Shown here: positions 9,092 to 31,225 of the stretch, piece by piece
Layout of the letters: each line of letters starts with the position of its first letter
Position numbering within the stretch: the first letter of the stretch is position 1
Virus record (IMG/VR): IMGVR_UViG_3300023174_000039
Coordinates: 186,001-250,000 of that record
Length of the DNA stretch: 64,000 nt
Reading direction: 5' to 3' (one strand)
Translations under genes and position numbers: made by a program
Notes under the pieces: generated by a model
Told to the model about the DNA's origin: nothing
The model's database searches: none
The model's input: the letters and a program-made list of their open reading frames with translations, nothing else

Positions 9092-9092
9092 T

Positions 9093-10178
9093 ATGACTGC
9101 TAAAGATCAGGCACCAGAACAAGTCTTTAAGATTCTAACACAGGATCAAATTGATCAGCGGCAAATAAATCACTTGACATCGTTCGCACGTGGTAGTACA
9201 CATTCAAATATTACCAATCACTGTGATCGTCCGTGGAACACTGTGACAATTCACACAGACGGTGAATGTTATACGTGCATTTGTGCTGCCTGGCTTCCTA
9301 TCTCTGTAGGCAATATTGAATCGTTTAGTAGTCTTGATGACATATGGAATAATCCAACCGCAGAATTTTTGCAACAAACTGTAACTGATAAAAAATATAC
9401 ATATTGTGCTGTTAATCACTGTGGCATACCAGATCATGAATTGTACCAGGACCCCAACAGTCCAACAACATACATTATTAATGTTTCTGTAGATGAAAGT
9501 TGTAATCTTGCATGCCCAAGTTGTCGACGAGAAGCTGTTAACATCACGTCTGGTCCTGTGTTTGATAAAAAACTAAAAATGGTAGAACATCTGACTCGGT
9601 TGATTACAGAGTTTAACAAACCATTAGAGATCATAATGATAAGTTCTGGAGACCCTCTGGCTAGCTTGATCATGCGACCACTTGTGTTAAATTGGGTACC
9701 ACAACCTAATCAGAAAATTACGTTGTTTACAAATGGATTACTAATGAAAAAGTTATTGCCGACCAGTAGCATATTACAAGATATATCTAAATTCTGGATC
9801 AGTGTAGATGCTGGGTCGGAAGATGTGTATGAAAATGTTCGTCGTCCTGGGAAGTACAGTGTGCTTAGAGAAAACTTAGATTGGCTAACCGAGAACAAGC
9901 CCAAGGATGCCACAGTTGTTTTAAAATTTACGTTGTCTGCCGGTAATGCATTGGACATTATGAACTTTTGCAAAATGTGCGAGCATTATGGATTCCATGG
10001 TGATATTACCAATCTAGATGATCAAAGGACCTGGGACAATTTCAACGATCACGAAGTCATAAGAAATAGTGATCATCCGTTGCACTCTGCGGCTGTAGAA
10101 CAACTGAAACAAGCATCTGTTCTTCCTTACATAGAAGTATCTCCATTCTTTAACAAGGTATTACATGATTCAAGATAA
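9093..10178 (+). CDS. Radical SAM protein with an N-terminal SPASM/twitch-like Cys cluster
   Basis: CNLACPSC; HCDRPWNTVTIHTDGECYTC; SSGDP. Confidence 0.88.
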   Translation: MTAKDQAPEQVFKILTQDQIDQRQINHLTSFARGSTHSNITNHCDRPWNTVTIHTDGECYTCICAAWLPISVGNIESFSSLDDIWNNPTAEFLQQTVTDKKYTYCAVNHCGIPDHELYQDPNSPTTYIINVSVDESCNLACPSCRREAVNITSGPVFDKKLKMVEHLTRLITEFNKPLEIIMISSGDPLASLIMRPLVLNWVPQPNQKITLFTNGLLMKKLLPTSSILQDISKFWISVDAGSEDVYENVRRPGKYSVLRENLDWLTENKPKDATVVLKFTLSAGNALDIMNFCKMCEHYGFHGDITNLDDQRTWDNFNDHEVIRNSDHPLHSAAVEQLKQASVLPYIEVSPFFNKVLHDSR

Positions 10179-11721
10179 CCTAACCGACAAGCAGAGCGAC
10201 TATGCTGTGTTCCTTCCAGCTATATCTGGCTTCTATGCCACCTTTGTGGGCAAGCAACGCAATGAACCGTATGTAGATCCTGCTAGGTTCCCCCAAGGAT
10301 TTACTGACATGGAACAGATGAATTGGCTTAATAGTCAAAAAGGTATGTTTCCTTACAAGTGGAGTCTGTACTCTGGTGGTCATGCTAACTTGGACTTGAA
10401 CAAACAAGACTGGTCAGAAGACATGGTTCGTAATCGTGATCCTAACACTATTATGCTAGGAGACTCAGGTGGGTTCCAGATTGCCAAAGGCCTGTGGGAA
10501 GGTGACTGGAAAGCCAACTCGGGTTGTCCAAAAGCTCAAAAGAAACGTGAGTCTGTGCTAACTTGGTTGGACACTATCAGCAACTATGGTATGGGCCTAG
10601 ATATTCCAACCTGGGTTATCCACGACAAGAAAGCAAGCGATGCCTGTCAGATCAAAACACTAGACGAAGCAGTTGCGGCTACCAAGTTCAACAATGAATA
10701 CTTTATCCGGCACCGCCGGGGCAAAGATCAAGGTGGCGCCCGTTTCTTAAATGTGCTACAAGGTGACAATCATACGTCTGCTGAGGAATGGTATCAGCAA
10801 ATGAAACACTTCTGCGATCCTGCTGTGTACCCCGATCGTCACTTTGATGGCTGGGGCATGGGCGGACAAAACATGTGCGATGTACACTTGGTGTTAAAAC
10901 GCCTTGTGGCCTTGCGCTACGACAATCTACTACAAGAGGGCAAACATGATTGGATGCACTTCTTGGGAACCTCCAAGTTGGAGTGGGCCGTTTTATTAAC
11001 TGTAATTCAGAGAGCCGTAAGAAAATATGTCAACCCGCAATTCACTATCTCGTTTGACTGCGCCAGTCCGTTCCTTGCAACAGCCAATGGACAAGTGTAT
11101 TTTGAAAATGTCTACGAGCACAACCAGAAGTGGTCGTATCGCATGGCTCCTTCAGCCGATGACAAAAAATACGCCACAGACACCCGCAAGTGGAGCGACG
11201 GAGTAGTAGCAGACGGCATCTACGATAACTGGGAAGATTCGCCATTAAGCAACCTGTTCAAGATGAAAGACATCTGTATCTACAAACCTGGTGACCTAAA
11301 CAAGATTGGCAAAGAAGGCAAAACATCCTGGGACTCATTCTCGTATGCTTTGCTGATGGGACATAATGTTTGGATGCACTTGACTGCGGTACAAGAAGCC
11401 AATAGACGGTTTGATGCAGGTTCTCGTCCTGCCATGATGCAACGGCAAGGCGGTGACTATGCCAAGTTTGAGGACATTGTGGAGGCCATCTTTGCCGCAC
11501 CAGATCGTGTGACTGCCGAAGCCATAATTGAACAGTATGACACCTATTGGATGGAAATTGTGGGCACCCGTGGATTCAAAGGCAAAAAAGCCAAGAATGC
11601 TCGAACCCAGTTCAAAGCATTGTTTAGTTTTGAAGAACCCGAAGTTGACACTGAATCTATAGATAGTGTACAATTAGATACAAACGCATTGAATCAACTT
11701 GAACAGGATCAAGAGAAATGA
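10165..11721 (+). CDS. dpdA: DpdA/TGT-family guanine transglycosylase, probably the phage DpdA2 type that inserts 7-deazaguanine into DNA
   Basis: GDSGGFQ, LDIP, NVLQG, HFLGTS and ISFDCASP motifs; co-located with folE, queD and queE. Confidence 0.82.
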   Translation: MIQDNLTDKQSDYAVFLPAISGFYATFVGKQRNEPYVDPARFPQGFTDMEQMNWLNSQKGMFPYKWSLYSGGHANLDLNKQDWSEDMVRNRDPNTIMLGDSGGFQIAKGLWEGDWKANSGCPKAQKKRESVLTWLDTISNYGMGLDIPTWVIHDKKASDACQIKTLDEAVAATKFNNEYFIRHRRGKDQGGARFLNVLQGDNHTSAEEWYQQMKHFCDPAVYPDRHFDGWGMGGQNMCDVHLVLKRLVALRYDNLLQEGKHDWMHFLGTSKLEWAVLLTVIQRAVRKYVNPQFTISFDCASPFLATANGQVYFENVYEHNQKWSYRMAPSADDKKYATDTRKWSDGVVADGIYDNWEDSPLSNLFKMKDICIYKPGDLNKIGKEGKTSWDSFSYALLMGHNVWMHLTAVQEANRRFDAGSRPAMMQRQGGDYAKFEDIVEAIFAAPDRVTAEAIIEQYDTYWMEIVGTRGFKGKKAKNARTQFKALFSFEEPEVDTESIDSVQLDTNALNQLEQDQEK

Positions 11722-12251
11722 ATAGAGAAGGTCACGAAAACATCGACCTGTTTATTGGTCAAGAAGTGGAACATACACCAGCATATGGACAAAAAACATT
11801 GTTTGTTGTAGGGTTACAAGATGTTGCTAAGATTCTAGAAATTCTCAAGAATCACAAATCCTATCTTGATCCAGAACGACACATAACCCATGTGTACTTT
11901 GGTGCTAACATGAGCTTTCCGCATCTCTTGGTCAATGACTACAGATGGCAAGACTGGGAAAACATGATCAAACAAGTATTGGATGCTGGCTATGTATGTA
12001 CCCTTGATATCGATATTGCATGCGTAGAAGGTCTTGCAGAAAGTTCATTGTGTGAACACAACAACTTTATCCCAATGATTTCGGCCAAGATTCCTTATAT
12101 TCGTCTACTCAACTACAATGCAACATTGAAGATTGATGACAAAGACTTTGACGCCACCAATCCAGGCGTGTGGTGTCATAGCATACATACACTACAAAAA
12201 CGAGCAGTGTTCACTGACTGGTCTAAGTATACCAAAGACACCAGTATCTAA
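11718..12251 (+). CDS. Conserved hypothetical protein coupled to dpdA
   Basis: ATGA overlap with dpdA; FIGQEVEHTPAYGQKTLFVVG and HVYFGAN. Confidence 0.75.
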   Translation: MNREGHENIDLFIGQEVEHTPAYGQKTLFVVGLQDVAKILEILKNHKSYLDPERHITHVYFGANMSFPHLLVNDYRWQDWENMIKQVLDAGYVCTLDIDIACVEGLAESSLCEHNNFIPMISAKIPYIRLLNYNATLKIDDKDFDATNPGVWCHSIHTLQKRAVFTDWSKYTKDTSI

Positions 12252-12946
12252 TGTCAAAACTTGAAAACGACCACAATAATCAGAACTCAAAATATCATCA
12301 ACACATTACAAAATCGTTTTTTCATGTGTGTACTGATAAATCAGTGCTGGAAATTGGTCCTAACATAGGACAACAAACCTATTGTATCATGAACAACAAT
12401 CCAAGATTTGTAACACAGGTCGAAGCCGATGAAGATAATTTGCCTAACTTAAGGTCTAGATTTCCACATAATAACATACTACATCAAGATATTTTTGATT
12501 ACTACAAAGTTCCGCACAAAATGGATGTTGTTGTATGTTGCGGAATGTTTTATCATTTGCACAATCCGTTTCATCTGTTAGAGCTAATTGTAAATCAGTC
12601 AGATCCTGAATATTTGGTGTTGGATTGTACCAGCGCAGATAATGCAAGTGGATGGCTCAAGGACTCAATATCACTTGAAGATCCAACAACTGGAGAATGC
12701 AAAATACGTGTTAGAGACGAATATACATCTGCTGTATTAATTGACACTGAAGTTACAAACACTCCTGGAATGAGACAGTCGTCAATGAAAAAACACATGC
12801 CATTTAGCATTGTGTTTCATACTGATTTGTATCGAAAGGCACTTGAATCATTTGGATATCAAACTCTGAAGATTGAGAAAATAGGAACTAGATTCAAGAC
12901 AAAAACCAAGCATAGTAGTTGGATGGGCCTATGGAAGAAAACATAA
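12251..12946 (+). CDS. Class I SAM-dependent methyltransferase
   Basis: VLEIGPNIG; DVVVCCGMFYH. Confidence 0.82.
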   Translation: MSKLENDHNNQNSKYHQHITKSFFHVCTDKSVLEIGPNIGQQTYCIMNNNPRFVTQVEADEDNLPNLRSRFPHNNILHQDIFDYYKVPHKMDVVVCCGMFYHLHNPFHLLELIVNQSDPEYLVLDCTSADNASGWLKDSISLEDPTTGECKIRVRDEYTSAVLIDTEVTNTPGMRQSSMKKHMPFSIVFHTDLYRKALESFGYQTLKIEKIGTRFKTKTKHSSWMGLWKKT

Positions 12947-14094
12947 ATCAAGACAAGTCAAAAACTGCCAACAACAAAAACTTTTGTCCAGCACCCTGGG
13001 TCAGTGTGTATCTTGCGCCAGATGGGACTATCGATAACTGTTGTGTTTCTAGAAACAATCTTGGCAACATTAAACATTCACAAGACACACACAAAATCTT
13101 GTCCGGCAATATCAATCTTGGTGTTCAGCAGGCCATGCTTGACAATCAAGTTGTGCCCGGGTGTGCCTGGTGTCACGGAACTGTGGATAACTTACAAGAT
13201 AGTTTGATAAGAGATCATGGTGATCTAGGCGATTCATTTTATCAACCCGGATTCTTTAATTTAAAATATCTAGATGCAAGATGGAGCAACACCTGTAATT
13301 TGGCGTGTGTATACTGCAACGAAGGATGCAGCTCGTTGTGGGCACAAGAAAACAACAGACACATTCCCATAAAAACCAATGACAGAAATAATTTTTTACA
13401 GTATGTGCTGGACAATGTGGAATCCCTAGAACGCATTCAAATGGCAGGTGGCGAACCGTTGTTGTTGAAAGAAAACGAGTTGTTGATCAACGAAATAATT
13501 TCTCGTAATCCCAAGTGTCACATAACCATCAACACAAATTTAATAAACATTGACAACAAAATTTATCAACAATTGATACGCCTAGACAATGTAAGATGGC
13601 TGGTGAGCTTTGAAGCCACCGGTGCTCAGTATGAGTACATTAGATACCCTGGAAAGTGGTCTGTGTTTGAAAACAATCTACAACAGCTCAAACTCGATGT
13701 TGAAAACACCCAAAGTACCATTAGCTTTAACATGGTATTTCTTTCGTTAAATGCCATGTCATACTGGGACACAATTGACTGGACCTTGGATTTTTTTAGT
13801 GACACCCAAAAATCAGCCACGCTGGCACTGGCATTGTACAACAATGGTGTGTTTCCCGGGGCGTTTGATCCCCGTGCGTTATCTGCCAACTATAGAAATC
13901 AGATAATCAATCGCATGCAAAAAGGCAATTACAGTGGACTCAGAGGCTATCAAAATATTGCCAAATCTCTTGCAAGTAACGAGCATATTAGTGTAAAATT
14001 CAATGACACAATGCAAGGACTTGACAGTCGCAGAGGTCTAAATAGTAGACAACTTTTTCCTGAAATTTATAACTCTATAGAAAACACTTTATGA
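12919..14094 (+). CDS. Radical SAM protein with an N-terminal twitch-like domain
   Basis: FCPAPWVSVYLAPDG..CC; CNLACVYC; AGGEP. Confidence 0.9.
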   Translation: MDGPMEENINQDKSKTANNKNFCPAPWVSVYLAPDGTIDNCCVSRNNLGNIKHSQDTHKILSGNINLGVQQAMLDNQVVPGCAWCHGTVDNLQDSLIRDHGDLGDSFYQPGFFNLKYLDARWSNTCNLACVYCNEGCSSLWAQENNRHIPIKTNDRNNFLQYVLDNVESLERIQMAGGEPLLLKENELLINEIISRNPKCHITINTNLINIDNKIYQQLIRLDNVRWLVSFEATGAQYEYIRYPGKWSVFENNLQQLKLDVENTQSTISFNMVFLSLNAMSYWDTIDWTLDFFSDTQKSATLALALYNNGVFPGAFDPRALSANYRNQIINRMQKGNYSGLRGYQNIAKSLASNEHISVKFNDTMQGLDSRRGLNSRQLFPEIYNSIENTL

Positions 14095-14534
14095 ATCAAG
14101 AGCAACGAGAAAAAATTGAAAGATGCAAACAATATGCAGATAGAAAAATCTGGGTTACCTTCCGCAAAGAAGGAATCCACAAGTACCCTGCTGCCGCTAG
14201 TGATCCTGCACTGGCGACTGGTGATGAATATGATGTTAGTTTCCTTGGTGTGCCTCATAGACACATATTTCATTTCCGAGTTTGGATTGATGTTTTTCAC
14301 AACGATCGCGATATTGAATTTATCCAGTTCAAACGCTGGTTGGAAAAGCTCTATGCCGGTGGAACACTGGAACTCAACTTCAAGAGTTGTGAAATGATCT
14401 CAGATGATCTGTACCTGCAGATTGCTCAAAGGTATCCTGACCGTGCGGTCTGGATTGAAGTGGCCGAAGATGGTGAGAACGGCGCTTTGATCAAATATGA
14501 AATTTCTCGCCCAAGTTTATCAATTGTAAATTAA
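14091..14534 (+). CDS. dpdL: T-fold QueD paralogue, DpdL-like (candidate CDG decarboxylase)
   Basis: LGVPHRHIF matches the LxxxHRHxF motif I recall for DpdL. Also has SCEMISDD and EVAEDGENG T-fold features and sits in the deazaguanine cluster. Confidence 0.62.
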   Translation: MNQEQREKIERCKQYADRKIWVTFRKEGIHKYPAAASDPALATGDEYDVSFLGVPHRHIFHFRVWIDVFHNDRDIEFIQFKRWLEKLYAGGTLELNFKSCEMISDDLYLQIAQRYPDRAVWIEVAEDGENGALIKYEISRPSLSIVN

Positions 14535-14544
14535 AAGGAAAAGT

Positions 14545-14772
14545 ATGGCCAAGCCTACAATCAAATCCAACCCTCGTGTGACTGAGATCTACGAGGATCT
14601 CGAAAAGTACTTGGAGTTCTGCCAAGACTACGGGTATCGCTACAACGAAGCGGACTTGTATAACTTCAAGAGTTATGCATTCCAGCAGTTCAACAAGTGG
14701 GCACAGGGCAAGAATGCCAAGAATATGTGGTGGGAAGATGCAAGACGTTTTGCAGGATATCGTCCCGCATGA
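14545..14772 (+). CDS. Small conserved phage hypothetical protein
   Basis: AAGGAAAAG SD; 75 aa. Confidence 0.75.
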   Translation: MAKPTIKSNPRVTEIYEDLEKYLEFCQDYGYRYNEADLYNFKSYAFQQFNKWAQGKNAKNMWWEDARRFAGYRPA

Positions 14773-15662
14773 TTCACGTATTCTTTGATTGCGGATCTTT
14801 TGGTAGTACCATAGAATCGGTGTTGCACAACTACACTGATCACAGTGTGCCAATTGATTCCAAGATCTTAGATGACGGATCCATGCATTCGTTTCTCAAA
14901 GAACAACATGTGACAAGTGTCAAGATACTGGATGATTTTCTTCATCAGGGTACATCTAACAGTAATACTATTACTACGCCAACGTATCCGTTTAAGGAAT
15001 TTAAACTACCTACAATTCTTGAGCATTTTTCTTTGAGCCAATCCTGGGCTACTGATACAAAAATTTTGATATTTCAACCGGACCTTAGAGCATGTGAACT
15101 AAACTTGTTGTTCAAGTATCACAAGGTCTGCATCAGTTACATAAATGCTGGTCTTGATATTATCATTGGTGATAATCAACACAATATTGTGAATTGGAAT
15201 CAAACCTATACTCACTGGTCGCAGATGAAAACCTGGGAACTGAGAGAGTGGTTGAGTTTGTTTTACACAGGGTTTGTGCAGGAGTTTATTGATGCCAAAG
15301 ACCAAGTAACAGATGATTGGTTAAAACTCACCAACACTGACATATTGTACAATACCAAAGAGTCATTGCTCAAAATTATAAATCACTGTGGGTTGACCAA
15401 CACCAAAGACCTTACAGATTTTGTGACCAAGTGGCAACAGGCACAAAAATACATTGTGGACGAGTTTAATCTGTTGGATCAAATTGTTGATTGTGCCATT
15501 GCTAACCAGCCACTAAAATGGCAACCTATCAACATCATAGCAGAAGCTATTGTTCAACAACGGCTGAGAGCAAAAGGTTATGAGATTCGATGCGACGGCC
15601 TTGACATATTCCCAACAGATGCTATAATGTTTAATACACTACTAGAGAAAGTACACCAATGA
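14769..15662 (+). CDS. Hypothetical protein, possibly sulfotransferase/P-loop-like
   Basis: Likely start MIHVFFDCGSFGSTI at 14769 (ATGA overlap). Confidence 0.65.
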   Translation: MIHVFFDCGSFGSTIESVLHNYTDHSVPIDSKILDDGSMHSFLKEQHVTSVKILDDFLHQGTSNSNTITTPTYPFKEFKLPTILEHFSLSQSWATDTKILIFQPDLRACELNLLFKYHKVCISYINAGLDIIIGDNQHNIVNWNQTYTHWSQMKTWELREWLSLFYTGFVQEFIDAKDQVTDDWLKLTNTDILYNTKESLLKIINHCGLTNTKDLTDFVTKWQQAQKYIVDEFNLLDQIVDCAIANQPLKWQPINIIAEAIVQQRLRAKGYEIRCDGLDIFPTDAIMFNTLLEKVHQ

Positions 15663-16861: not shown

Positions 16862-17808
16862 GTAAAATTATTGTTACAGGTGCTGCCGGCTACATCGGTG
16901 GACAGATTAGTATAGCATTGCGTGATGCAGGATATCAAGTGATTGGCATTGACCTTATGCCAGCACCATCACACTTGGTAACACAGTTTACCAGATTTCA
17001 TCAAACAGATTTTGCAAGCGATACTGCATTGCAAACTATTCTAGAACATCGCCCGGATGCTATCATACATTGTGCTGGGACCAGTTTGGTTGGTCCAAGT
17101 ATTGACAACCCTCAAGAATACTACAACAACAATGTGGTCAAAACATTGAAGTTGTTGGACATGTTGGTTGATAAACTATCCAGCACTAGATTCATATTCA
17201 GTTCAAGTGCGGCTGTGTACGGTGTTCCGTTTATGACTCCGTGTCACGAGATAGATCCATGTGATCCTATCAGTCCGTATGGCGAAAGCAAGCTGATGAT
17301 TGAGCAAGCAATGGCTAGTTATCATCGAGCATATGGTTTAAACTATGTTGCATTTCGATACTTTAATGCATGCGGTGCTGATAGCAGTCGCCGGCACGGT
17401 CAGGCTCCTGGAGCCACACACATCATTGCTAGAGTACTTGAAAGTATCAAAAATGATCAGGAGTTTACACTCAACGGCATAGACTACCCAACCAAAGATG
17501 GCACATGTATTCGGGATTATATCCATGTAGAAGATATTGCTCGTGCTCATGTATTGGCATTAGATACCAAAGTTCCATCAGGCATTTACAATCTTGGCAG
17601 CAATACTGGTGTCAGCAACAGAGAGATTATCACAGCCGCAGAAGCTGTTACCAGTAGAACTGTTAATGTGGTAACTGGGCCTGCTCGTGCAGGAGATCCT
17701 CCGGTGCTGACTGCTGAACCAGGTAAATTTACCGAAGTAGCTGGAGAATGGAAAAAGTACACACTAGATGACACAATACAACATGCATGGAATTGGTACA
17801 ATGTTTGA
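16858..17808 (+). CDS. galE: UDP-glucose 4-epimerase
   Basis: VTGAAGYIG, SSSAAVYG, YGESK, FRYFNACGA, RDYIHVED. Confidence 0.92.
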   Translation: MSKIIVTGAAGYIGGQISIALRDAGYQVIGIDLMPAPSHLVTQFTRFHQTDFASDTALQTILEHRPDAIIHCAGTSLVGPSIDNPQEYYNNNVVKTLKLLDMLVDKLSSTRFIFSSSAAVYGVPFMTPCHEIDPCDPISPYGESKLMIEQAMASYHRAYGLNYVAFRYFNACGADSSRRHGQAPGATHIIARVLESIKNDQEFTLNGIDYPTKDGTCIRDYIHVEDIARAHVLALDTKVPSGIYNLGSNTGVSNREIITAAEAVTSRTVNVVTGPARAGDPPVLTAEPGKFTEVAGEWKKYTLDDTIQHAWNWYNV

Positions 17809-18397
17809 TAAAATCCTGCAGTTTGAACGAGCTCTAGCAGAGTTTACCGGTGCACCATATGCAATCATGACTGATTGTTGTACACATGCCATTGAACTGT
17901 GTTTGCGATATGATCAAGTTAAGCATTGTAAGATGCAACCTTACACATACCTAAGTATTCCAATGACCATGCACAAGTTGGGCATCAAATATGAATATCT
18001 TGATCACGAATGGCAACGTTGGGTTGGTGAATATCCCATACTTGAAACACGCATTTGGGATAGTGCTCGTAGACTTGAAAAGGATATGTATCGTCCGGGT
18101 ACCTTGACCTGTTTGAGTTTTGGTCGTGGCAAGCCTTTGCATATTGGTCGTGGCGGTGCTATCTTGTTAGATGACGTTGAGGCTTACGATACCATGCTAG
18201 CTCAACGATACGATGGTAGAGACTTGAGTATCACACCTTGGGAATCACAACAGGTGTTTAAAGTGGGGTATCATTACAAGCCCACTATCGAAGAAGCTGT
18301 GCAAGGACTTGCATTGCTAGAAGGTGTCAAGACAAATCGGCCAAAGCCAATCCCAGTAGATTATCCAGATCTACGTAAAATTAAAATTATACCTTGA
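17801..18397 (+). CDS. Short DegT/DnrJ-like PLP aminotransferase-family protein
   Basis: FERALAEFTG...DCCTHAIELCL...CLSFGRGKPL.IGRGGAIL. Confidence 0.75.
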   Translation: MFDKILQFERALAEFTGAPYAIMTDCCTHAIELCLRYDQVKHCKMQPYTYLSIPMTMHKLGIKYEYLDHEWQRWVGEYPILETRIWDSARRLEKDMYRPGTLTCLSFGRGKPLHIGRGGAILLDDVEAYDTMLAQRYDGRDLSITPWESQQVFKVGYHYKPTIEEAVQGLALLEGVKTNRPKPIPVDYPDLRKIKIIP

Positions 18398-18422
18398 CAT
18401 CGCGATCTAAATACGTTACAAT
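18394..18422 (+). promoter_or_regulatory. Sigma70 promoter with nested TAAATA, upstream of folE
   Basis: TTGACA 18394-99, 17 nt spacer, TACAAT 18417-22; TAAATA at 18408-13. Confidence 0.7.
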
Positions 18423-18461
18423 AGCACAAAGACATCCACGTCATTAACTCGGAGAACCAAC

Positions 18462-19274
18462 TTGACAAAAACTTTTATTCCAGATCCTGTTATACATACA
18501 GATTCAAAAAACACATTCGTCCCCCACGCTCATCAGAGCCCAATTGAAAAAGCCAGCAAGAACATGAGTGACAAGGGCTATGAAGAAGGTTACCTAGGCG
18601 ATGCCATTCGTTTCAAGATGAAACGTGACAACAAACGTTTCTGGGCAGGCGACAACATTAGCGACTATATCAATGGGGCAGATAAAGAAACTTTGATTGA
18701 CGAAGCAACAGAAGCATTTGAACTAGTGCTTGATCGTTTGCTTATTGATCGTGAAAATGATCCCAACTCAAAAGGTACAGCAAGACGACTTGCTAAAATG
18801 TACTTCAATGAAATTATGGAAGGTAGATATGAACCAGAACCAGACGCCACAGCATTTCCAAATGATTCGGAGAGCCGTTATGAAGGCATGCTTGTGGTAC
18901 GTAGCGAGTTGCGCAGTATGTGTAGTCATCATCACCAACCTGTGGCTGGCGTGGCTTATATTGGCATTATTGCTGCTCAAACTCTTATTGGACTTAGCAA
19001 ATATACACGCATTGCACAGTGGTGCGCCAGACGAGGTACTCTCCAGGAGGAACTTTGTAATGACATTGCCCGCGAGATTAGTAAAGCTACTGTTTCAGAA
19101 AACGTAGCAGTGTACATTCAAGCCACACACGGATGCTGTGAGAATCGTGGCATTATGGCACATAGCTCGTTGACTCAGACTACTGTGTTGCAAGGTGCGT
19201 TCAAAACAGATCCGTCAGTGAAGAAAGAGTTCTTTGACAACATTAAACTACAACAGGAGTTTGCCCCAAGATGA
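18462..19274 (+). CDS. folE: GTP cyclohydrolase I
   Basis: SMCSHHHQP, GLSKYTRIAQWCARR..LQE, ATHGCCENRG; TTG start after GGAG. Confidence 0.95.
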   Translation: MTKTFIPDPVIHTDSKNTFVPHAHQSPIEKASKNMSDKGYEEGYLGDAIRFKMKRDNKRFWAGDNISDYINGADKETLIDEATEAFELVLDRLLIDRENDPNSKGTARRLAKMYFNEIMEGRYEPEPDATAFPNDSESRYEGMLVVRSELRSMCSHHHQPVAGVAYIGIIAAQTLIGLSKYTRIAQWCARRGTLQEELCNDIAREISKATVSENVAVYIQATHGCCENRGIMAHSSLTQTTVLQGAFKTDPSVKKEFFDNIKLQQEFAPR

Positions 19275-19672
19275 GATATGAAACCCTAGAAGAAGCCGCT
19301 GCCGCAGGTGCCGCACCTTGGAGTGACGAAGCTACAGAATATTCAGATTATCATGTGGCAGTGTTCCGTGATGCTTATCCAGTAACTGTTGGACATTTAC
19401 TATTTGTTCCACGATGGAACAAGAATGACATCATTGAACAAGCAATGAACTATGCTTTCCGTTTTGGTCACCGAAAAGTAGTAACTGGTGAATGGGAGGC
19501 CTACAATGTGGGTATCAATTGTGGCGAGGCTGCAGGACAAACTGTGATGTATCCTCATGTGCATTTGATTCCACGCAAGGTGGGCGACTGCGCCAATCCC
19601 ATTGGTGGTGTTCGAGGTGTGATACACGGACAGGCCAACTATAAAGCTACTGGCTATACCAAACCAGTATAA
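19271..19672 (+). CDS. HIT-family hydrolase
   Basis: GQTVMYPHVHLIPR. Confidence 0.92.
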   Translation: MRYETLEEAAAAGAAPWSDEATEYSDYHVAVFRDAYPVTVGHLLFVPRWNKNDIIEQAMNYAFRFGHRKVVTGEWEAYNVGINCGEAAGQTVMYPHVHLIPRKVGDCANPIGGVRGVIHGQANYKATGYTKPV

Positions 19673-19683
19673 GTAATGATCTC

Positions 19684-19749
19684 AGCGGCCTTTAGAGCAT
19701 TCATCCCGCTATACAAATTCTGCAAGCCTATGCTATAATCTAACATAGG
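19684..19749 (+). promoter_or_regulatory. Candidate preQ1-I-like riboswitch or leader upstream of queD
   Basis: AGCGG/CCGCT stem, CATCCC and A-rich tail, possible loop-tail pseudoknot, then a CCTATG/CATAGG hairpin over the SD. Confidence 0.4.
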
Positions 19750-19758
19750 AGAATAATA

Positions 19759-20313
19759 ATGGCACAATCATCGACTCAGGATCTAATTAGACATATGGAG
19801 CAAAATCTTCCATATCGTGGGCCTGTTCAATACAAGTTCACCAGTACCAAAGAGTACATTGACGCATTTCCTTGTGCATACCGACAGTGGAGAGCCGACA
19901 GTCATTGTAACTTGAATCATGGGTACTCGTTTAGTATGAAGTTTTACTTTGGTACTAACGACCTTGATGTTCGAAACTGGGCTGCCGACTATGGTGGACT
20001 CAAGGAACTTAAAAAGATCCTAGAAGATCAATTTGATCACACTACTTTGGTCAGTGCCGACGATCCAGAACTGGAATTTTACAAAGAGATGGAACGTCGC
20101 AAACTGGCCAAGCTCACAATCTTGCCCCGTGTAGGATGTGAATCACTTGCAGACATGCTGTACAAGTATGTTAATGGTGTTTATATACCAGACTTTTGGG
20201 GTCCAGGTGAAGCAGAGCGTTTGTGGTGCTACCGAGTGGAAGTACGTGAAACACAAGCAAACATGGCTTTCCGTGAAGGCCATAGAGAATGGAATGAGGA
20301 CTTATTTGCATGA
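19759..20313 (+). CDS. queD: 6-carboxy-5,6,7,8-tetrahydropterin synthase
   Basis: CAYRQWRADSHCNLNHGY, FDHTTL, GCESLA, EVRET. Confidence 0.88.
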   Translation: MAQSSTQDLIRHMEQNLPYRGPVQYKFTSTKEYIDAFPCAYRQWRADSHCNLNHGYSFSMKFYFGTNDLDVRNWAADYGGLKELKKILEDQFDHTTLVSADDPELEFYKEMERRKLAKLTILPRVGCESLADMLYKYVNGVYIPDFWGPGEAERLWCYRVEVRETQANMAFREGHREWNEDLFA

Positions 20314-21164
20314 ACACCCCCGAATTTGATATTGCAATTTTATTGCCCACTCGTGGGCGATCTGATTCACTAGAACGTAGTGTAAAAAGTGTAATTGAAT
20401 TAGCATCAGCGCCAGACAAAATTCAACTGATGTTTGGATTTGATGACGATGACGAAATTGGCACCAAGCACTTTGAAGATGAACTACAGCCGTGGCTAGA
20501 TGCACAAGGTGTGCATTATACTGCCATGAGCTTTGCTCCTTTAGGATATATTCGTCTCAACGAATATGTCAACGAACTAGCACGTAACAGTGATGCACGT
20601 TGGTTGGTATTTTGGAATGACGACGCTGTGATGGAAACCCAGGACTGGGACAAAGAAATCATGAAGCACGAAGGCGAGTTTAAGTTACTTGCATTCCATA
20701 CACATCATGATCATCCTTACAGTATCTTTCCTATTGCACCTCGCAAGTGGTTGGAGTTGTTGGGTTATTTGAGCCCACATCAGATCTCTGATGCATGGCT
20801 GAGTCAACAGGCATACATGCTGGATATCTGGGAACGGATTGAAGTTGATGTGTTGCACGATCGTCATGATCTTACCGGCAACAACAACGATGAAACATTC
20901 CAGAATCGCCCCATGCTGGAAGGCAATCCCAAAGATCCTAGAGATTTCCATAGCATTCAACAAATGGAACTTCGTCATGTTGACTGCGCCAAAATTGCAA
21001 CTTACTTGCAAAACGAATGCGGCAAAGACATGAGTTTCTTTGCCAACATCTTCAGAGGCACCCAAGATCCTTGGGAAAAACTAGCCAAGAACGATGTCAA
21101 CAAGCAAATGATGCAGTTTGCTAACCCACACAGTAATAAACAAAATGTCACAATCAAGTCTTGA
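20310..21164 (+). CDS. GT-A (GT2-like) glycosyltransferase
   Basis: ILLPTRGR; FWNDD (DXD-like). Confidence 0.82.
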   Translation: MNTPEFDIAILLPTRGRSDSLERSVKSVIELASAPDKIQLMFGFDDDDEIGTKHFEDELQPWLDAQGVHYTAMSFAPLGYIRLNEYVNELARNSDARWLVFWNDDAVMETQDWDKEIMKHEGEFKLLAFHTHHDHPYSIFPIAPRKWLELLGYLSPHQISDAWLSQQAYMLDIWERIEVDVLHDRHDLTGNNNDETFQNRPMLEGNPKDPRDFHSIQQMELRHVDCAKIATYLQNECGKDMSFFANIFRGTQDPWEKLAKNDVNKQMMQFANPHSNKQNVTIKS

Positions 21165-21933
21165 AGATCGTATTAAAAAATACTGGAACACACAGCCGTG
21201 CAACATCAAACACGGCACTAGCGATATTGGTACTGCTGAATTCTTTCAGGAAGTAAGCGAACGCCGATACAAAGTAGAATCTCACATTGCTGAGTTTGCA
21301 GGATTTCACTTGTGGGCCGGTAAACGTGTGCTAGAAATTGGTTGCGGTATTGGATCAGATGCTGAAGAATTTGCCAAGCATGGTGCCGAGTATGTGGGCA
21401 TTGACTTGAGTGACCAAAGCATTGCACTAAGTCGTCAACGATTTGAAACACTGGGACTCGAAGGCGAGTTTTACAATATTGATGCAACAGATGCCACGGC
21501 TCTTGCTACACTGGGCGAGTTTGATCTTGTGTATAGTTATGGTGTAATACATCATTTTCCTGGCATTGACAAGATTATTGACAATGTACACGAAGTGGTC
21601 AAGCATGGTGGAGAATTCCGATTCATGGTGTATGCCAAGAACTCCTGGAAGTATGCCATGATACAAAAAGGGCTTGATCAATTTGAGGCACAAGCAGGTT
21701 GCCCATACGCACAGGCATTCAGTAAAGATGAGATTCATCAGATGATGAACAGCGACAATGGATGGTATGTTGAACGTTTGCGTCAAGATCACTGCTTTAT
21801 GTACAATGTAGATGAGTACAAGAAAGGCAATTATGTGTTAGAGCCATGGTTTGAAGCCATGAGCGATGCACATCGTCAAGCGGTACGAGAATATCTAGGC
21901 TGGCATTTGTTGGTTAAGGCTCGCAAAGTTTGA
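21145..21933 (+). CDS. Class I SAM-dependent methyltransferase
   Basis: VLEIGCGIGSD; FDLVYSYGVIHH. Confidence 0.9.
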   Translation: MSQSSLEDRIKKYWNTQPCNIKHGTSDIGTAEFFQEVSERRYKVESHIAEFAGFHLWAGKRVLEIGCGIGSDAEEFAKHGAEYVGIDLSDQSIALSRQRFETLGLEGEFYNIDATDATALATLGEFDLVYSYGVIHHFPGIDKIIDNVHEVVKHGGEFRFMVYAKNSWKYAMIQKGLDQFEAQAGCPYAQAFSKDEIHQMMNSDNGWYVERLRQDHCFMYNVDEYKKGNYVLEPWFEAMSDAHRQAVREYLGWHLLVKARKV

Positions 21934-22661
21934 GTAGACTGTTTGCTTTTGGATGTAGTTTTACCCATTATAGATGGAGTACCTGGGCTGACATCCTAGC
22001 AGTGCAGTACGATGAGTACCAGAATTGGGGACAAAGTGGCGGAGGCAATCATTTTATCTTTAATTCTGTTATGGAAGCAGATCAGCGTCACAAGTTTACT
22101 GCAGGAGATACTGTGGTAATTTGTTGGACCAATGTCATGCGAGAAGATCGATACACACACAATTGGCAAACACACGGGAACATTACCACTTGTCAATACT
22201 ATGATGATGCCTATGTGCGTAAATATGTTAGCGAACGTGGTAACCTAGTCCGAGACATGGCATTTATCAAGGCCACACAATTATTTTTACAAAACATTCC
22301 TGACCTAAAGCATGAATTTTTGAGCATGTGTCCATTGGTATACCCAGATCAATACAATCCAAACAGAGTCAGCGACAACCCAGATATTACAGCCTTGTAT
22401 GAATCCGTTCTAAATAACATCAAACCCAGTTACTACGAAACTGTGTTAGCCGAAGATAGATCAAATGGATGGAAGTTGCATAACTGGAACACAGGATTAA
22501 AAGATCCGCATCCTACACCCGTAGAGCACTTGGCGTATTTGGATTGGGTTTTGCCGGGTTGGGTGACAAACTCAGATATTCGTGTTAAAGTAGTACAAGA
22601 AACTGCAGACCCCGACATCATACACAAATTTTTAAAACGACCAGAGATTACGAGATTATAA
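21930..22661 (+). CDS. SGNH/GDSL-like protein
   Basis: FAFGCSFT, NWGQSGGGN, DPHPT. Confidence 0.65.
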   Translation: MSRLFAFGCSFTHYRWSTWADILAVQYDEYQNWGQSGGGNHFIFNSVMEADQRHKFTAGDTVVICWTNVMREDRYTHNWQTHGNITTCQYYDDAYVRKYVSERGNLVRDMAFIKATQLFLQNIPDLKHEFLSMCPLVYPDQYNPNRVSDNPDITALYESVLNNIKPSYYETVLAEDRSNGWKLHNWNTGLKDPHPTPVEHLAYLDWVLPGWVTNSDIRVKVVQETADPDIIHKFLKRPEITRL

Positions 22662-22662
22662 T

Positions 22663-23517
22663 ATGAAACTCAAAGTATCAGAACTATTTTATTCAGCACA
22701 AGGAGAAGGACGCTTTATTGGTGTACCAAGTGTATTCTTGAGAACATTTGGTTGTAACTTTACCTGCGCAGGATTTGGATGCAAGCCTGGCGAAAAGTCC
22801 ACAGAAGCAGACGAGGTTGCCAAGACTGTACACTTGTACAAAACATTTGAAGAGCTTCCGCTTGTAAACACAGGGTGTGACAGCTATGCGTCATGGCACC
22901 CTGACTTTAAAGAACTCAGTCCCACATACGAGATTGATGAGCTAGTAGACAAAATGCTAGACTTGATTCCAGATCGCAAGTGGACCAATCGCACAGGCAA
23001 TGATACACATCTTGTGATCACAGGAGGTGAGCCTTTGCTAGGTTGGCAACGTGTATATCAAGACTTGTTTGATCATGCTGACATGCGTGGTATTAAAAAT
23101 GTTACATTTGAAACCAATGGCACTCAGCAGTTACAACCTAAATTTGGCGCATATCTTAACGAGTGGTTGGCCGGGCACAATGAACTTACATTCAGTGTAA
23201 GTCCCAAACTCAGCGCCAGTGGTGAAGCATGGGAAGAGGCTATCAAGCCGGAGATTGTTGCAACGTATCAAAACTACGGCACAGTGTATCTTAAATTTGT
23301 GATTGATAGCGAAGCACACTTTGAAGAAGTGGATCGTGCAGTAACAGCGTATCGTGCGGCAGGATTTGAAGGTGTAGTATATGTGATGCCGCAAGGTGGT
23401 GTTGTTGCACCATATGCAGAGAATCGTGTGAACGTTGCAGACTGGGCACTTGCACGTGGTTATTATTATACTCCAAGATTGCACGTTGATCTCTGGGGCA
23501 ATGGATGGGGCAAGTGA
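22663..23517 (+). CDS. queE: 7-carboxy-7-deazaguanine synthase (radical SAM)
   Basis: ELFYSAQGEG..GVPSVFLRTFGCNFTC; ITGGEP; FETNG; VSPK; PRLHV. Confidence 0.9.
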   Translation: MKLKVSELFYSAQGEGRFIGVPSVFLRTFGCNFTCAGFGCKPGEKSTEADEVAKTVHLYKTFEELPLVNTGCDSYASWHPDFKELSPTYEIDELVDKMLDLIPDRKWTNRTGNDTHLVITGGEPLLGWQRVYQDLFDHADMRGIKNVTFETNGTQQLQPKFGAYLNEWLAGHNELTFSVSPKLSASGEAWEEAIKPEIVATYQNYGTVYLKFVIDSEAHFEEVDRAVTAYRAAGFEGVVYVMPQGGVVAPYAENRVNVADWALARGYYYTPRLHVDLWGNGWGK

Positions 23518-30942: not shown

Positions 30943-30947
30943 TTTTT

Positions 30948-31022: not shown

Positions 31023-31056
31023 AGCTCTGTTAAATAACAGACACTAGGAGAGCACT

Positions 31057-31218: not shown

Positions 31219-31225
31219 CGCACAA

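What the first reader, a model, noticed from the sequence alone, without database searches (positions are those of the whole stretch)
10165..23517. 7-deazaguanine DNA-modification set with a DpdL-like gene and no QueC predicts unsubstituted 7-deazaguanine in DNA
Seen: DpdA-type transglycosylase, FolE, QueD, QueE and a second T-fold protein with LxxxHRHxF. No QueC, QueF, ArcS or Gat-QueC is recognisable in the window. Known: FolE, QueD and QueE make CDG; QueC is needed for preQ0; DpdL has been reported to decarboxylate CDG. Inference: the genome carries dDG (or dCDG) as an anti-restriction mark, possibly further decorated by the interleaved MTases and GTs.
Basis: partly seen in the sequence, partly recalled or inferred. 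Interest (0 to 1): 0.66.

Follow-up and report, generated by a model that had tools for sequence, protein, structure and literature searches.

The report
QueC-less deazaguanine DNA-modification cluster with glycosyltransferase

Summary
Window 10165-23517 encodes FolE, QueD and QueE. It also encodes a DpdL homolog carrying the exact LxxxHRHxF motif, 57% identical to Acidovorax phage ACP17 DpdL and 36% to phiST DpdL. The 518-aa protein matches no family HMM, but it folds as a tRNA-guanine-transglycosylase TIM barrel and keeps both catalytic aspartates. It has no conserved zinc-site cysteines.

The whole 331,654-bp genome (about 95% complete) has no QueC; the only weak hit is NadE. It also has no QueF and no phosphoribosyltransferase.

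The prediction of unsubstituted dDG is only partly supported. A GT4-type glycosyltransferase (15659-16861) sits beside DpdL in this clade (22 of 22 full loci), in marine relatives, and in PA5oct, ACP17, BUDD, BCSR5, Phosso and BUCT-ZZ01. It is absent from phiST, the only lineage with proven dDG. GalE is also core (20 of 22 loci), and relatives carry variable sugar-tailoring genes. The window's own methyltransferase/radical-SAM pairs are strain-specific inserts.

PA5oct DNA resists restriction enzymes whose sites contain G, which favours DNA over tRNA as the target.

Verdict: a new variant of the DpdA/DpdL system, possibly producing a glycosylated deazaguanine. The chemistry is untested.

The parts
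10165..11721 (+). DpdA-like TGT-superfamily transglycosylase (518 aa, P0001), a divergent clade without conserved zinc-site cysteines
   Evidence: AF2 model pLDDT 90.4. Foldseek top 50 hits are all tRNA-guanine transglycosylases. VIA-align: ArcTGT Z 17.7, bacterial TGT 16.1, DpdA 7ui4 14.8, generic TIM barrels 11.5 or less. hhalign to E. coli TGT 90.7% with D89/D143/D264 aligned to D100/D146/D298, and to ACP17 gp123 96.4%. D100, S101, G103, H265 and D298 are invariant in 50 homologs.
11718..12251 (+). Conserved 177-aa protein of unknown function that follows the TGT-like gene
   Evidence: Present in 21 of 22 full relatives' loci. Homolog of ACP17 gp122, which precedes ACP17's TGT-like gene (E 5e-11). 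No family or Atlas hit.
12251..12946 (+). SAM methyltransferase, strain-specific insert
   Evidence: Pfam Methyltransf_11. Weak NCBIfam hit to pseudaminic-acid-associated methylase. Found in 0 of 80 relatives.
12919..14094 (+). N-terminal twitch-domain radical SAM protein, variable insert
   Evidence: NCBIfam N_Twi_rSAM 217.8 bits, cut-off 170. Found in 7 of 80 relatives.
14091..14534 (+). DpdL homolog (147 aa, P0122), proposed CDG decarboxylase
   Evidence: LGVPHRHIF motif, unique in the genome. 57% identical to ACP17 DpdL and 36% to phiST CGPG_00067. His and Glu residues shared with QueD. Motif definition from PMC10516641.
14545..14772 (+). Conserved 75-aa protein between DpdL and the glycosyltransferase
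   Evidence: Present in 22 of 22 full loci and in marine relative L018. Function unknown.
14697..15662 (+). 321-aa protein of unknown function, variable
   Evidence: No family hit. Found in 6 of 80 relatives.
15659..16861 (+). GT4-type (GT-B fold) glycosyltransferase linked to DpdL (400 aa, P0273)
   Evidence: AF2 model pLDDT 72. Foldseek top hits are GlgM, BshA, MshA and glycogen synthase, E about 1e-11. Homologs PA5oct gp167 and ACP17 gp124 give weak Glycos_transf_1 hits. Present in 22 of 22 full loci. Adjacent to DpdL in eight lineages.
16858..17808 (+). UDP-glucose 4-epimerase (GalE)
   Evidence: NCBIfam TIGR01179 299.8 bits, cut-off 262.3. Pfam Epimerase E 6.5e-56. Present in 20 of 22 full loci.
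17768..18397 (+). Short DegT/PseC-like aminotransferase-family protein (209 aa)
   Evidence: Pfam DegT_DnrJ_EryC1 E 8.7e-14, covering only part of the profile. Present in 16 of 22 full loci at the same short length.
18462..19274 (+). GTP cyclohydrolase I (FolE)
   Evidence: Pfam E 4.7e-39. Present in 22 of 22 full loci.
19271..19672 (+). HIT-family (HinT-like) nucleotide hydrolase/transferase
   Evidence: Pfam HIT E 4.9e-9. NCBIfam HinT. Also in L004 and marine L018.
19759..20313 (+). QueD (CPH4 synthase), motif CxxxHGY
   Evidence: Pfam PTPS 53.8 bits. PHROG QueD-like E 2.4e-35. 51% identical to ACP17 QueD. The only PTPS hit in the genome.
20310..21164 (+). Possible second glycosyltransferase (weak GT2 match)
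   Evidence: Pfam Glycos_transf_2 E 0.0058, below cut-off. Present in 11 of 22 full loci.
21118..21933 (+). Class I SAM methyltransferase, variable
   Evidence: Pfam Methyltransf_12 E 3e-19. Found in 6 of 80 relatives.
21930..22661 (+). 243-aa protein of unknown function, variable
   Evidence: No family hit. Found in 3 of 80 relatives.
22663..23517 (+). QueE-like radical SAM (CDG synthase)
   Evidence: PHROG QueE-like E 3.4e-56. Homologous to PA5oct gp162 and marine L018 QueE. NCBIfam QueE models score below cut-off.
9048..10178 (+). Flanking SPASM/twitch radical SAM protein, variable insert
   Evidence: Pfam SPASM and Radical_SAM. Found in 5 of 80 relatives.
4726..7386 (+). Family B DNA polymerase, syntenic anchor upstream of the cluster
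   Evidence: 51% identical to PA5oct DNA polymerase. DNA_pol_B in relatives.

Best explanation
This is a QueC-less 7-deazaguanine DNA-modification cluster of a freshwater jumbo phage distantly related to Pseudomonas phage PA5oct.

Proposed steps:
1. FolE, QueD and QueE convert GTP to 7-carboxy-7-deazaguanine (CDG). This is inferred from homology to an established pathway.
2. With no QueC anywhere in the genome, the pathway cannot go on to preQ0. The DpdL homolog is proposed to remove the carboxyl group and give 7-deazaguanine. That proposal comes from the literature and has not been shown biochemically.
3. The 518-aa TGT-superfamily enzyme keeps the two catalytic aspartates and the base-binding aspartate but has no conserved zinc-site cysteines. 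It is inferred to exchange guanine in phage DNA for the deazaguanine base after replication.
4. The conserved core also holds a GT4-type glycosyltransferase and GalE. I therefore think it more likely than not that the deazaguanine is further glycosylated with a UDP-hexose, either on the free base or in DNA. The attachment site is unknown. The other sugar-tailoring genes vary between relatives.

The result would be DNA protected from restriction enzymes that read G.

My probabilities:
- The cluster is a deazaguanine nucleic-acid modification system without the preQ0 branch: about 0.8.
- The target is DNA: about 0.75.
- The glycosyltransferase acts within this pathway: about 0.5.
- The final DNA base carries a sugar: about 0.3 to 0.35.
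For: - Gene identities.
- DpdL homology and motif.
- TGT fold and catalytic residues of P0001. Link to ACP17's TGT-like gp123.
- No QueC, QueF or phosphoribosyltransferase in the 95%-complete genome.
- The same QueC-less pattern holds in PA5oct, Phosso, ACP17 and BUCT-ZZ01.
[quoted passage not shown] PA5oct gp168 is a 34%-identical homolog of P0001, two genes from its DpdL.
- The cluster sits directly downstream of the DNA polymerase gene in this phage, in the freshwater and marine relatives and in PA5oct.
- Glycosyltransferase linkage: 22 of 22 full loci of the clade. There is one copy per genome, and it lies next to DpdL, in ACP17, PA5oct, BUDD and BCSR5. It also lies next to DpdL in BUCT-ZZ01, Phosso, marine contigs and a MAG contig. 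Gene order around it differs between lineages.
- The glycosyltransferase is absent from the whole genomes of phiST and five other DpdL phages.
- GalE scores above its equivalog cut-off and is core.
- Relatives carry NDP-sugar C-methyltransferase-like, GFO/IDH/MocA and ADH-like genes in the same slot.
- Precedent: a GT4-type enzyme (HuiG) glycosylates a 7-deazaguanine-type base in huimycin biosynthesis.
- No ThyA-like hydroxymethylase is present that could supply a hydroxymethyl-pyrimidine acceptor.
Against: - No chemistry was measured for this phage or for any glycosyltransferase-bearing relative.
- DpdL's decarboxylase activity is only a proposal. Co-expression of dpdL and dpdA from phiST and from ACP17 in E. 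coli gave no dDG.
- Plain 7-deazaguanine has no hydroxyl group, so the sugar acceptor site is not obvious.
- The glycosyltransferase model is of moderate confidence (pLDDT 72) and resembles many GT4 enzymes without specificity, including a pterin glucosyltransferase.
- P0001 is structurally no closer to the solved DpdA (Z 14.8) than to tRNA TGTs (Z 16 to 17.7), so its nucleic-acid target cannot be read from the fold.
- It has no conserved zinc-site cysteines of the kind tRNA TGTs have.
- QueE is identified mainly through a PHROG family.
Confidence: 0.6

Rival explanations
1. The DNA carries plain 2'-deoxy-7-deazaguanine (or dCDG), as in Cellulophaga phage phiST. The glycosyltransferase, GalE and the other sugar genes serve something else, such as virion or host-envelope glycosylation.
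For: phiST has FolE, QueD, QueE, DpdL and a DpdA, no QueC, and 100% dDG. This window has the same enzyme classes. 7-Deazaguanine offers no obvious sugar acceptor.
Against: The glycosyltransferase family is present once per genome and next to DpdL in eight lineages, with shuffled gene order. It is absent from the whole phiST genome. Chance or an unrelated function does not easily explain that. GalE is core in the clade. ACP17 dpdL plus dpdA without the glycosyltransferase gave no dDG in E. coli, but so did the phiST pair, which has no glycosyltransferase, so that negative result does not discriminate.
Confidence: 0.25
2. The TGT-like enzyme modifies tRNA, either the phage's own GUN-anticodon tRNAs or host tRNAs, with a deazaguanine. 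The sugar would then be added as in glycosylated queuosines.
For: tRNA-Asp(GTC), Tyr(GTA), Asn(GTT) and His(GTG) are all encoded at 35268-37598. The fold is as close to tRNA TGTs as to DpdA. From my own knowledge, not tested here: eukaryotic queuosine is mannosylated or galactosylated by glycosyltransferases.
Against: The tRNA array covers 19 amino acids, so the GUN set is not selective. PA5oct DNA itself resists restriction enzymes with G in their sites. DpdL correlates with dDG in DNA in phiST. The cluster is embedded among replication genes. P0001 has no conserved zinc-site cysteines of the kind tRNA TGTs have.
Confidence: 0.07
3. The cluster makes a soluble small molecule, either a glycosylated pterin or a deazapurine glycoside of the huimycin type, rather than a nucleic-acid mark.
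For: FolE, a PTPS-family enzyme and a GT4 enzyme are the ingredients of pterin glycoside synthesis. A pterin glucosyltransferase appears among the glycosyltransferase model's Foldseek hits at ranks 40 to 50. Huimycin-type clusters combine the deazapurine core genes with a GT4 enzyme and methyltransferases.
Against: A TGT-superfamily enzyme with intact catalytic aspartates is core. Secondary-metabolite deazapurine clusters characteristically lack one. PA5oct DNA is modified at G. The pterin glucosyltransferase hit is not among the best matches.
Confidence: 0.05

Closest known systems
Cellulophaga phage phiST dDG system (FolE, QueD, QueE, DpdL, DpdA3; Cui, Hutinet et al. 2023, PMC10516641)
   Same: QueC-less CDG pathway plus a DpdL with the LxxxHRHxF motif and a divergent TGT-family enzyme, near the DNA polymerase gene.
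   Different: DpdL is only 36% identical. phiST's DpdA3 (259 aa) matches the P0001 family only weakly (hhalign 73%). phiST has no member of the glycosyltransferase family anywhere in its genome and no GalE or sugar genes in its cluster.
Acidovorax phage ACP17 cluster (gp122, gp123 TGT-like, gp124, gp125 DpdL, QueE)
   Same: Homologs of the 177-aa protein, the glycosyltransferase, DpdL (57%), QueD (51%), FolE and QueE. Its TGT-like gp123 is the closest named relative of the P0001 family (hhalign 96.4%).
   Different: gp123 is shorter (424 aa). A related MAG-contig homolog (L020, recovered by the same iterated profile) keeps a CxCxxC motif. There is no GalE or sugar tailoring set. The DNA chemistry is unreported, and dpdL plus dpdA alone were inactive in E. 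coli.
Pseudomonas jumbo phage PA5oct / MIJ3 (Wroclawvirus), gp168-gp167-gp166 ... gp162
   Same: Same backbone: DNA polymerase, structural protein, P0001 homolog (34%), glycosyltransferase, DpdL (56%), QueE, 5'-3' exonuclease. DNA is experimentally resistant to restriction enzymes with G in their sites.
   Different: No GalE, DegT, FolE or QueD inside the cluster. Its DpdL has HFH instead of HRH. The identity of the modified base has not been determined.
Bacterial Dpd system and phage DpdA1/DpdA2 (preQ0, ADG, G+, preQ1 in DNA)
   Same: A TGT-superfamily enzyme that exchanges G in DNA for a 7-deazaguanine made from GTP. The solved DpdA (7ui4) matches the model at Z 14.8.
   Different: Those systems need QueC to make preQ0, which is absent here. 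P0001 has no conserved zinc-site cysteines and is not found by any curated model.
Huimycin/dapiramicin biosynthesis (HuiG, a GT4-type glycosyltransferase acting on a 7-deazaguanine-type base)
   Same: A GT4-family enzyme encoded with FolE/QueD/QueE-type genes and methyltransferases, which adds a UDP-sugar to a deazapurine base.
   Different: It is a bacterial secondary-metabolite pathway that uses preQ0 (needs QueC) and has no transglycosylase.
T4 glucosyl-hydroxymethylcytosine (alpha/beta-glucosyltransferases)
   Same: Concept only: a GT-B-fold enzyme that adds a hexose from a UDP-sugar to a modified base in phage DNA.
   Different: The acceptor is a pyrimidine hydroxymethyl group. The T4 enzymes were not among the top 50 structural matches. 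No ThyA-like hydroxymethylase is present in this genome.

Membership tests
DpdA (7-deazaguanine DNA transglycosylase, TGT superfamily) | TGT-type TIM-barrel fold | tested here: met
   pLDDT 90.4 model. The five best wide-search matches are ArcTGT, QTRT2, bacterial TGT, DpdA and Cap10 (Z 13.3 to 17.7), against 11.5 or less for other TIM barrels.
DpdA (7-deazaguanine DNA transglycosylase, TGT superfamily) | Catalytic aspartate pair and base-binding aspartate | tested here: met
   D100 and D298 are invariant and D146 is at least 90% conserved in 50 homologs. They align to E. coli TGT D89, D264 and D143.
DpdA (7-deazaguanine DNA transglycosylase, TGT superfamily) | Zinc-binding CxCxxC...H subdomain of TGTs | tested here: not met
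   There is no such motif in P0001 and no conserved cysteine in the family alignment. A MAG-contig homolog (L020) recovered by the same iterated profile as ACP17 gp123 keeps CxCxxC. Whether every phage DpdA subfamily has this site was not established.
DpdA (7-deazaguanine DNA transglycosylase, TGT superfamily) | Recognised by curated TGT/DpdA models (Pfam PF01702, NCBIfam, PADLOC) | tested here: inconclusive
   No hit. PF01702 also misses the TGT-like genes of ACP17, BUDD, BUCT-ZZ01, PA5oct and Phosso, so the negative result says little.
DpdA (7-deazaguanine DNA transglycosylase, TGT superfamily) | Sequence relationship to an accepted phage DpdA subfamily (DpdA1 to DpdA4) | tested here: inconclusive
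   hhalign 96.4% and HMM E 2.3e-7 to ACP17 gp123. Only 73% to phiST DpdA3. Which subfamily ACP17's enzyme belongs to could not be read because the paper's supplement is not held. DpdA1, DpdA2 and DpdA4 references were not compared.
DpdA (7-deazaguanine DNA transglycosylase, TGT superfamily) | Encoded together with 7-deazaguanine synthesis genes | tested here: met
   Within 12 kb of FolE, QueD, QueE and DpdL. This holds in 22 of 22 full relatives' loci.
DpdA (7-deazaguanine DNA transglycosylase, TGT superfamily) | Inserts the base into DNA rather than tRNA | not testable with these tools
   Indirect only: PA5oct DNA resists restriction enzymes with G in their sites.
DpdL (proposed CDG decarboxylase, QueD paralog) | LxxxHRHxF in place of QueD's CxxxHGH | tested here: met
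   LGVPHRHIF at residues 52-60, the only such site in the genome. Definition.
DpdL (proposed CDG decarboxylase, QueD paralog) | Homology to phiST CGPG_00067 and ACP17 DpdL | tested here: met
   36% identity (E 3e-9) and 57% identity (E 9e-41) by tblastn. Local HMM E 5e-38 and 3e-55.
DpdL (proposed CDG decarboxylase, QueD paralog) | Genome has DpdA, FolE, QueD and QueE but no QueC | tested here: met
DpdL (proposed CDG decarboxylase, QueD paralog) | Decarboxylates CDG to 7-deazaguanine | not testable with these tools
   Also unproven for the family itself. Heterologous tests were negative.
GT4 / GT-B glycosyltransferases | Two-Rossmann-domain GT-B fold | tested here: met
   The model (pLDDT 72, pTM 0.70) matches GlgM, BshA, MshA and glycogen synthase at E about 1e-11, probability 1.0.
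GT4 / GT-B glycosyltransferases | Pfam Glycos_transf_1 signature | tested here: inconclusive
   P0273 itself has no Pfam hit. Homologs give sub-threshold hits. A few close and distant homologs carry precomputed PF00534. Atlas neighbours are GT1/GT4 clusters.
GT4 / GT-B glycosyltransferases | Uses an NDP-sugar donor on a defined acceptor | not testable with these tools
   Donor is guessed from the adjacent GalE. The acceptor is unknown.

The most novel reading that the evidence does not exclude
The conserved quartet of TGT-like enzyme, DpdL, GT4 glycosyltransferase and GalE installs a sugar-bearing 7-deazaguanine in phage DNA. To my knowledge this would be the first glycosylated purine hypermodification of a phage genome. 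On this reading the glycosyltransferase could be a missing factor in the ACP17 reconstitution (the glycosyltransferase-less phiST pair also failed in E. coli). The variable sugar-tailoring genes in related freshwater and marine jumbo phages (C-methyltransferase-like, oxidoreductases, aminotransferase-like, radical SAM/methyltransferase pairs, 2OG oxygenases) would diversify the sugar in an arms race with modification-dependent nucleases.
Probability: 0.3. Interest if true: 0.85.

Novelty: new variant of a known kind. Interest (0 to 1): 0.62.

Why it matters
Known 7-deazaguanine DNA marks are small substituents at C7. This cluster belongs to a very abundant group of freshwater and marine jumbo phages. 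Its TGT-like protein has more than 7,400 homologs in the 90%-clustered database and 942 cluster representatives at 50% identity.

If the conserved glycosyltransferase and GalE act on the deazaguanine, a new class of DNA hypermodification would be common in nature. It would also be directly testable in cultured relatives (PA5oct, MIJ3, ACP17, BUCT-ZZ01). The same result might help explain why the proposed DpdL reaction could not be reconstituted for ACP17.

The work also defines a large TGT-superfamily clade without conserved zinc-site cysteines that current curated models (Pfam, NCBIfam, PADLOC, PHROGs) miss. Surveys of DNA-modifying phages therefore under-count them.

Tried and rejected
- Megablast of the whole region against GenBank phages found nothing.
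- Pfam, PHROG, NCBIfam, PADLOC and PDB sequence searches, with the single sequence and with a profile, gave nothing for the 518-aa protein. Only structure and profile-profile comparison placed it.
- The one weak QueC hit in the genome was followed up and rejected as NadE.
- The Atlas search gave nothing for the conserved 177-aa protein.
- The supplement of PMC10516641, which lists the DpdA subfamily of each phage, is not held. Subfamily assignment of ACP17's enzyme, and hence of P0001, stays open. I did not fetch DpdA1, DpdA2 or DpdA4 reference sequences.
- A read-level test for G-specific miscalls was considered. All runs that hold the phage are kept only as contigs.
- A hydroxymethyl-pyrimidine acceptor for the glycosyltransferase was considered and set aside because there is no ThyA-like gene.
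- A nucleotide-level route through a phosphoribosyltransferase, as in tubercidin, was considered. No PRTase exists in this genome, although some relatives have one.
- The Paride paper was checked for DNA-modification data and has none.
- Restriction-site avoidance statistics were considered and not run, because they would not discriminate between the readings.

Full report
**Context**

The window is bases 186001-250000 of a 331,654-bp IMG/VR virus record estimated to be 95% complete. All genes in the region lie on the + strand. Near-identical sequence is held by lake-water and freshwater metagenomes from at least two studies. The family B DNA polymerase (4726-7386) is 51% identical to that of Pseudomonas jumbo phage PA5oct, and the 5'-3' exonuclease (25091-26110) is 54% identical. 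Gene order around the finding follows the PA5oct backbone. The phage is therefore a distant, uncultured relative of PA5oct-like jumbo phages.

**Check of the observation**

- FolE (18462-19274), QueD (19759-20313) and QueE (22663-23517) are supported by Pfam and PHROG matches. For QueE the support rests on a full-length PHROG match (E 3.4e-56). The curated QueE models score below their cut-offs.
- The second T-fold protein (14091-14534, P0122) carries LGVPHRHIF. That pattern occurs once in the six-frame translation of the whole genome.
- The paper that defined DpdL gives exactly this signature: LxxxHRHxF replacing QueD's CxxxHGH (PMC10516641).
- P0122 is 57% identical to the ACP17 protein at the DpdL position and 36% identical to phiST CGPG_00067, the founding DpdL.
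- In an alignment with QueDs, the first histidine of the motif and two glutamates are invariant.

**The 518-aa protein (10165-11721, P0001)**

It has no hit in Pfam, PHROGs, NCBIfam, PADLOC or PDB sequences. Its sequence shows DSGGFQ, NVLQG and FDCASP.

- Family size: more than 7,400 homologs in the 90%-clustered database, and 942 representatives at 50% identity.
- Conservation: in 50 diverse homologs, D100, S101, G103, H265 and D298 are invariant.
- Structure: the AlphaFold2 model is confident (pLDDT 90.4, pTM 0.90).
  - Foldseek's 50 best PDB matches are all tRNA-guanine transglycosylases.
  - An exhaustive VIA-align search ranks archaeosine TGT (Z 17.7), QTRT2 (16.4), bacterial TGT (16.1), the DNA preQ0 insertase DpdA 7ui4 (14.8) and Cap10 (13.3) above generic TIM barrels (11.5 or less).
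- Profile comparison with E. coli TGT gives 90.7% probability. It aligns D89, D143 and D264 with D100, D146 and D298.
- The family profile matches ACP17 gp123, the TGT-like gene next to ACP17's DpdL, at 96.4% probability and HMM E 2.3e-7. It matches phiST DpdA3 only at 73%.
- No cysteine is conserved, so the CxCxxC...H zinc site of TGTs is absent. A MAG-contig homolog (L020) recovered by the same iterated profile as ACP17 gp123 keeps CxCxxC.
- PF01702 also fails on the TGT-like genes of ACP17, BUDD, BUCT-ZZ01, PA5oct and Phosso, so its silence here means little.

P0001 is a catalytically intact member of the TGT superfamily in a distinct clade without conserved zinc-site cysteines. Calling it DpdA rests on context, not on a diagnostic feature.

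**Absence of the preQ0 branch**

- Across the whole genome the only QueC-model hit (14 bits) is a 293-aa protein that is an NAD synthase (Pfam E 1.8e-50).
- QueF gave no hit.
- There is no phosphoribosyltransferase, so a nucleotide-level route is not encoded.
- PA5oct, Phosso, ACP17 and BUCT-ZZ01 also lack QueC.

The 400-aa protein at 15659-16861 (P0273) is homologous to PA5oct gp167 and ACP17 gp124 (E about 1e-11). Both lie directly beside DpdL and both give weak Glycos_transf_1 matches. Its model (pLDDT 72) matches GT4-type GT-B glycosyltransferases at E about 1e-11. Atlas neighbours are GT1/GT4 clusters.

An iterated local HMM, and whole-record searches with a positive control, show the distribution of the family:
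- One member, always within a few genes of DpdL, in ACP17, PA5oct-like phages, Xanthomonas phages BUDD and X1, Burkholderia phage BCSR5, Sinorhizobium phage Phosso (annotated there as glycosyltransferase), Synechococcus phage BUCT-ZZ01 (67% identical), marine contigs and a MAG contig.
- None in the whole genomes of phiST, RHph_I1_18, Bakedbeans, Ahp1, D479 and MA9V-3.
- Gene order differs between lineages: glycosyltransferase-TGT-DpdL in BUDD, TGT-glycosyltransferase-DpdL in ACP17 and PA5oct, DpdL-glycosyltransferase in BUCT-ZZ01 and Phosso. Functional linkage explains this better than shared ancestry of a block.
- phiST is the only lineage in which plain dDG was measured, and it lacks the glycosyltransferase.

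**Comparison across the clade**

Eighty IMG/VR loci carrying close DpdL relatives were fetched. In the 22 loci with a full 10 kb on both sides, presence of each window gene is:

| Gene | Present |
|---|---|
| TGT-like gene | 22/22 |
| 177-aa gene | 21/22 |
| DpdL | 22/22 |
| 75-aa gene | 22/22 |
| Glycosyltransferase | 22/22 |
| GalE | 20/22 |
| FolE | 22/22 |
| Short DegT-like gene | 16/22 |
| QueD | 17/22 |

- The epimerase passes the GalE equivalog cut-off (299.8 against 262.3 bits).
- The window's methyltransferase at 12251-12946 occurs in 0 of 80 relatives. The twitch radical SAM genes occur in 7 of 80 and 5 of 80, and the methyltransferase at 21118-21933 in 6 of 80.
- Relatives fill the same slots with a B12-binding radical SAM protein, an NDP-sugar C-methyltransferase-like protein, a GFO/IDH/MocA oxidoreductase, an ADH-like protein and a phosphoribosyltransferase. 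Marine relatives carry 2OG-Fe(II) oxygenases.
- So the core is deazaguanine synthesis, a transglycosylase, DpdL, a glycosyltransferase and GalE. Around it sits a rapidly changing set of tailoring genes, mostly of sugar-tailoring type.

**Mechanism**

Shown by homology: the enzymes for GTP to CDG; a DpdL homolog; a TGT-superfamily enzyme with intact catalytic residues; a GT-B glycosyltransferase; GalE; no QueC.

Inferred:
- DpdL turns CDG into 7-deazaguanine. This is a literature proposal that is biochemically unproven.
- The TGT-like enzyme exchanges G in DNA for the deazaguanine base.
- The target is DNA. [quoted passage not shown] PA5oct gp168 is the only TGT-superfamily candidate I could recognise in it.

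Speculative but favoured: the glycosyltransferase adds a hexose supplied through GalE to the deazaguanine.
- A precedent is HuiG, a GT4-type enzyme that glycosylates a 7-deazaguanine-type base in huimycin biosynthesis.
- No ThyA-like hydroxymethylase is present that could provide a pyrimidine acceptor.
- Against it: the acceptor position on 7-deazaguanine is unclear, no chemistry exists for any phage that has the glycosyltransferase, and the glycosyltransferase model is unspecific. A pterin glucosyltransferase appears at ranks 40 to 50.

**Rivals**

- Plain dDG with unrelated sugar genes: probability about 0.25.
- tRNA as the target: about 0.07. The four GUN tRNAs are part of a 24-tRNA array that covers 19 amino acids.
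- A soluble glycosylated pterin or deazapurine: about 0.05.

**Novelty**

- DpdL and the QueC-less route are published, and ACP17 is named in that paper. PA5oct has been predicted to carry a modified G.
- The DpdL paper does not contain any word beginning with 'glycosyl'. No paper in the library links DpdA or DpdL with a glycosyltransferase in phages, and 'DpdA5' occurs nowhere.
- I rate this a new variant of a known kind. It is a large TGT clade without conserved zinc-site cysteines and unrecognised by curated models, coupled to a conserved glycosyltransferase and GalE module.
Its interpretation is partly supported.

Noticed in passing
window 30868-39113: An array of 24 tRNA genes on the + strand covers 19 amino acids (no Phe) with three tRNA-Met. 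It includes all four GUN anticodons (Asp, Tyr, Asn, His).
   Followed up: partly
G000:C1:133700-134581 (L003:1360-2241): The phage encodes an NAD synthase (NadE, Pfam E 1.8e-50), followed by a small ferredoxin-like ORF rich in CxxCxxC motifs. This was the source of the false QueC signal.
   Followed up: partly
window 57088-63231 (- strand): A 2047-aa ORF lies on the minus strand in an otherwise plus-strand region. It was not examined.
   Followed up: no
L014:8212-9363 (Vibrio phage Bakedbeans gp176) and L017:8431-9312 (Chryseobacterium phage MA9V-3): In these two phages the DpdL domain is the C-terminal part of a longer protein, with about 260 and 180 extra N-terminal residues of unknown function. 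Both genomes lack the glycosyltransferase.
   Followed up: no
L001:14772-15149 (PA5oct gp166): PA5oct's DpdL homolog has HFH where the family signature has HRH, so the arginine is not universal.
   Followed up: no
L009:4093-4554 (BUCT-ZZ01), L018:9489-10037 (marine contig), L072:15256-15894: Some relatives carry a phosphoribosyltransferase inside the deazaguanine cluster. This hints at a nucleotide-level route like tubercidin biosynthesis. The window's genome has none.
   Followed up: partly
L040:9445-10734, L092:7341-8270, L034:7007-7960, L035:9481-11547, L018:4989-5597 and 8855-9496: The slots between core genes are filled differently in related phages: an NDP-sugar C-methyltransferase-like protein, a GFO/IDH/MocA oxidoreductase, an ADH-like protein, a B12-binding radical SAM protein and 2OG-Fe(II) oxygenases. 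This is a hypervariable tailoring region.
   Followed up: partly
window 7383-8318, 9048-10178, 12251-14094: Two SPASM/twitch radical SAM genes (9048-10178, 12919-14094) and two methyltransferase-like genes (7383-8318, 12251-12946) flank the TGT-like gene. The 12251-14094 methyltransferase plus radical-SAM pair and the radical SAM gene at 9048-10178 are rare or absent in 80 relatives. The 311-aa methyltransferase-like gene at 7383-8318 is common (61 of 80).
   Followed up: partly
window 19759-20313; L007:3463-3957; L008:3805-4281: The phage QueDs of this window, phiST and ACP17 all read CxxxHGY rather than the canonical CxxxHGH.
   Followed up: no
window 22663-23517: The QueE-like protein has an unusual cysteine spacing (CNFTC AGFGC ... 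about 30 residues ... GCDSY) in place of a simple CxxxCxxC radical-SAM motif.
   Followed up: no
L101:16817-17530: One relative carries a Bax-inhibitor-1 family membrane protein (Pfam E 5.6e-54) inside the cluster region.
   Followed up: no
window 23909-24385: A small nucleotidyltransferase similar to RfaE domain II and glycerol-3-phosphate cytidylyltransferase lies downstream of QueE (just past the 135-aa ORF at 23505-23912). It could activate a sugar phosphate. It is found in only 6 of 80 relatives.
   Followed up: partly
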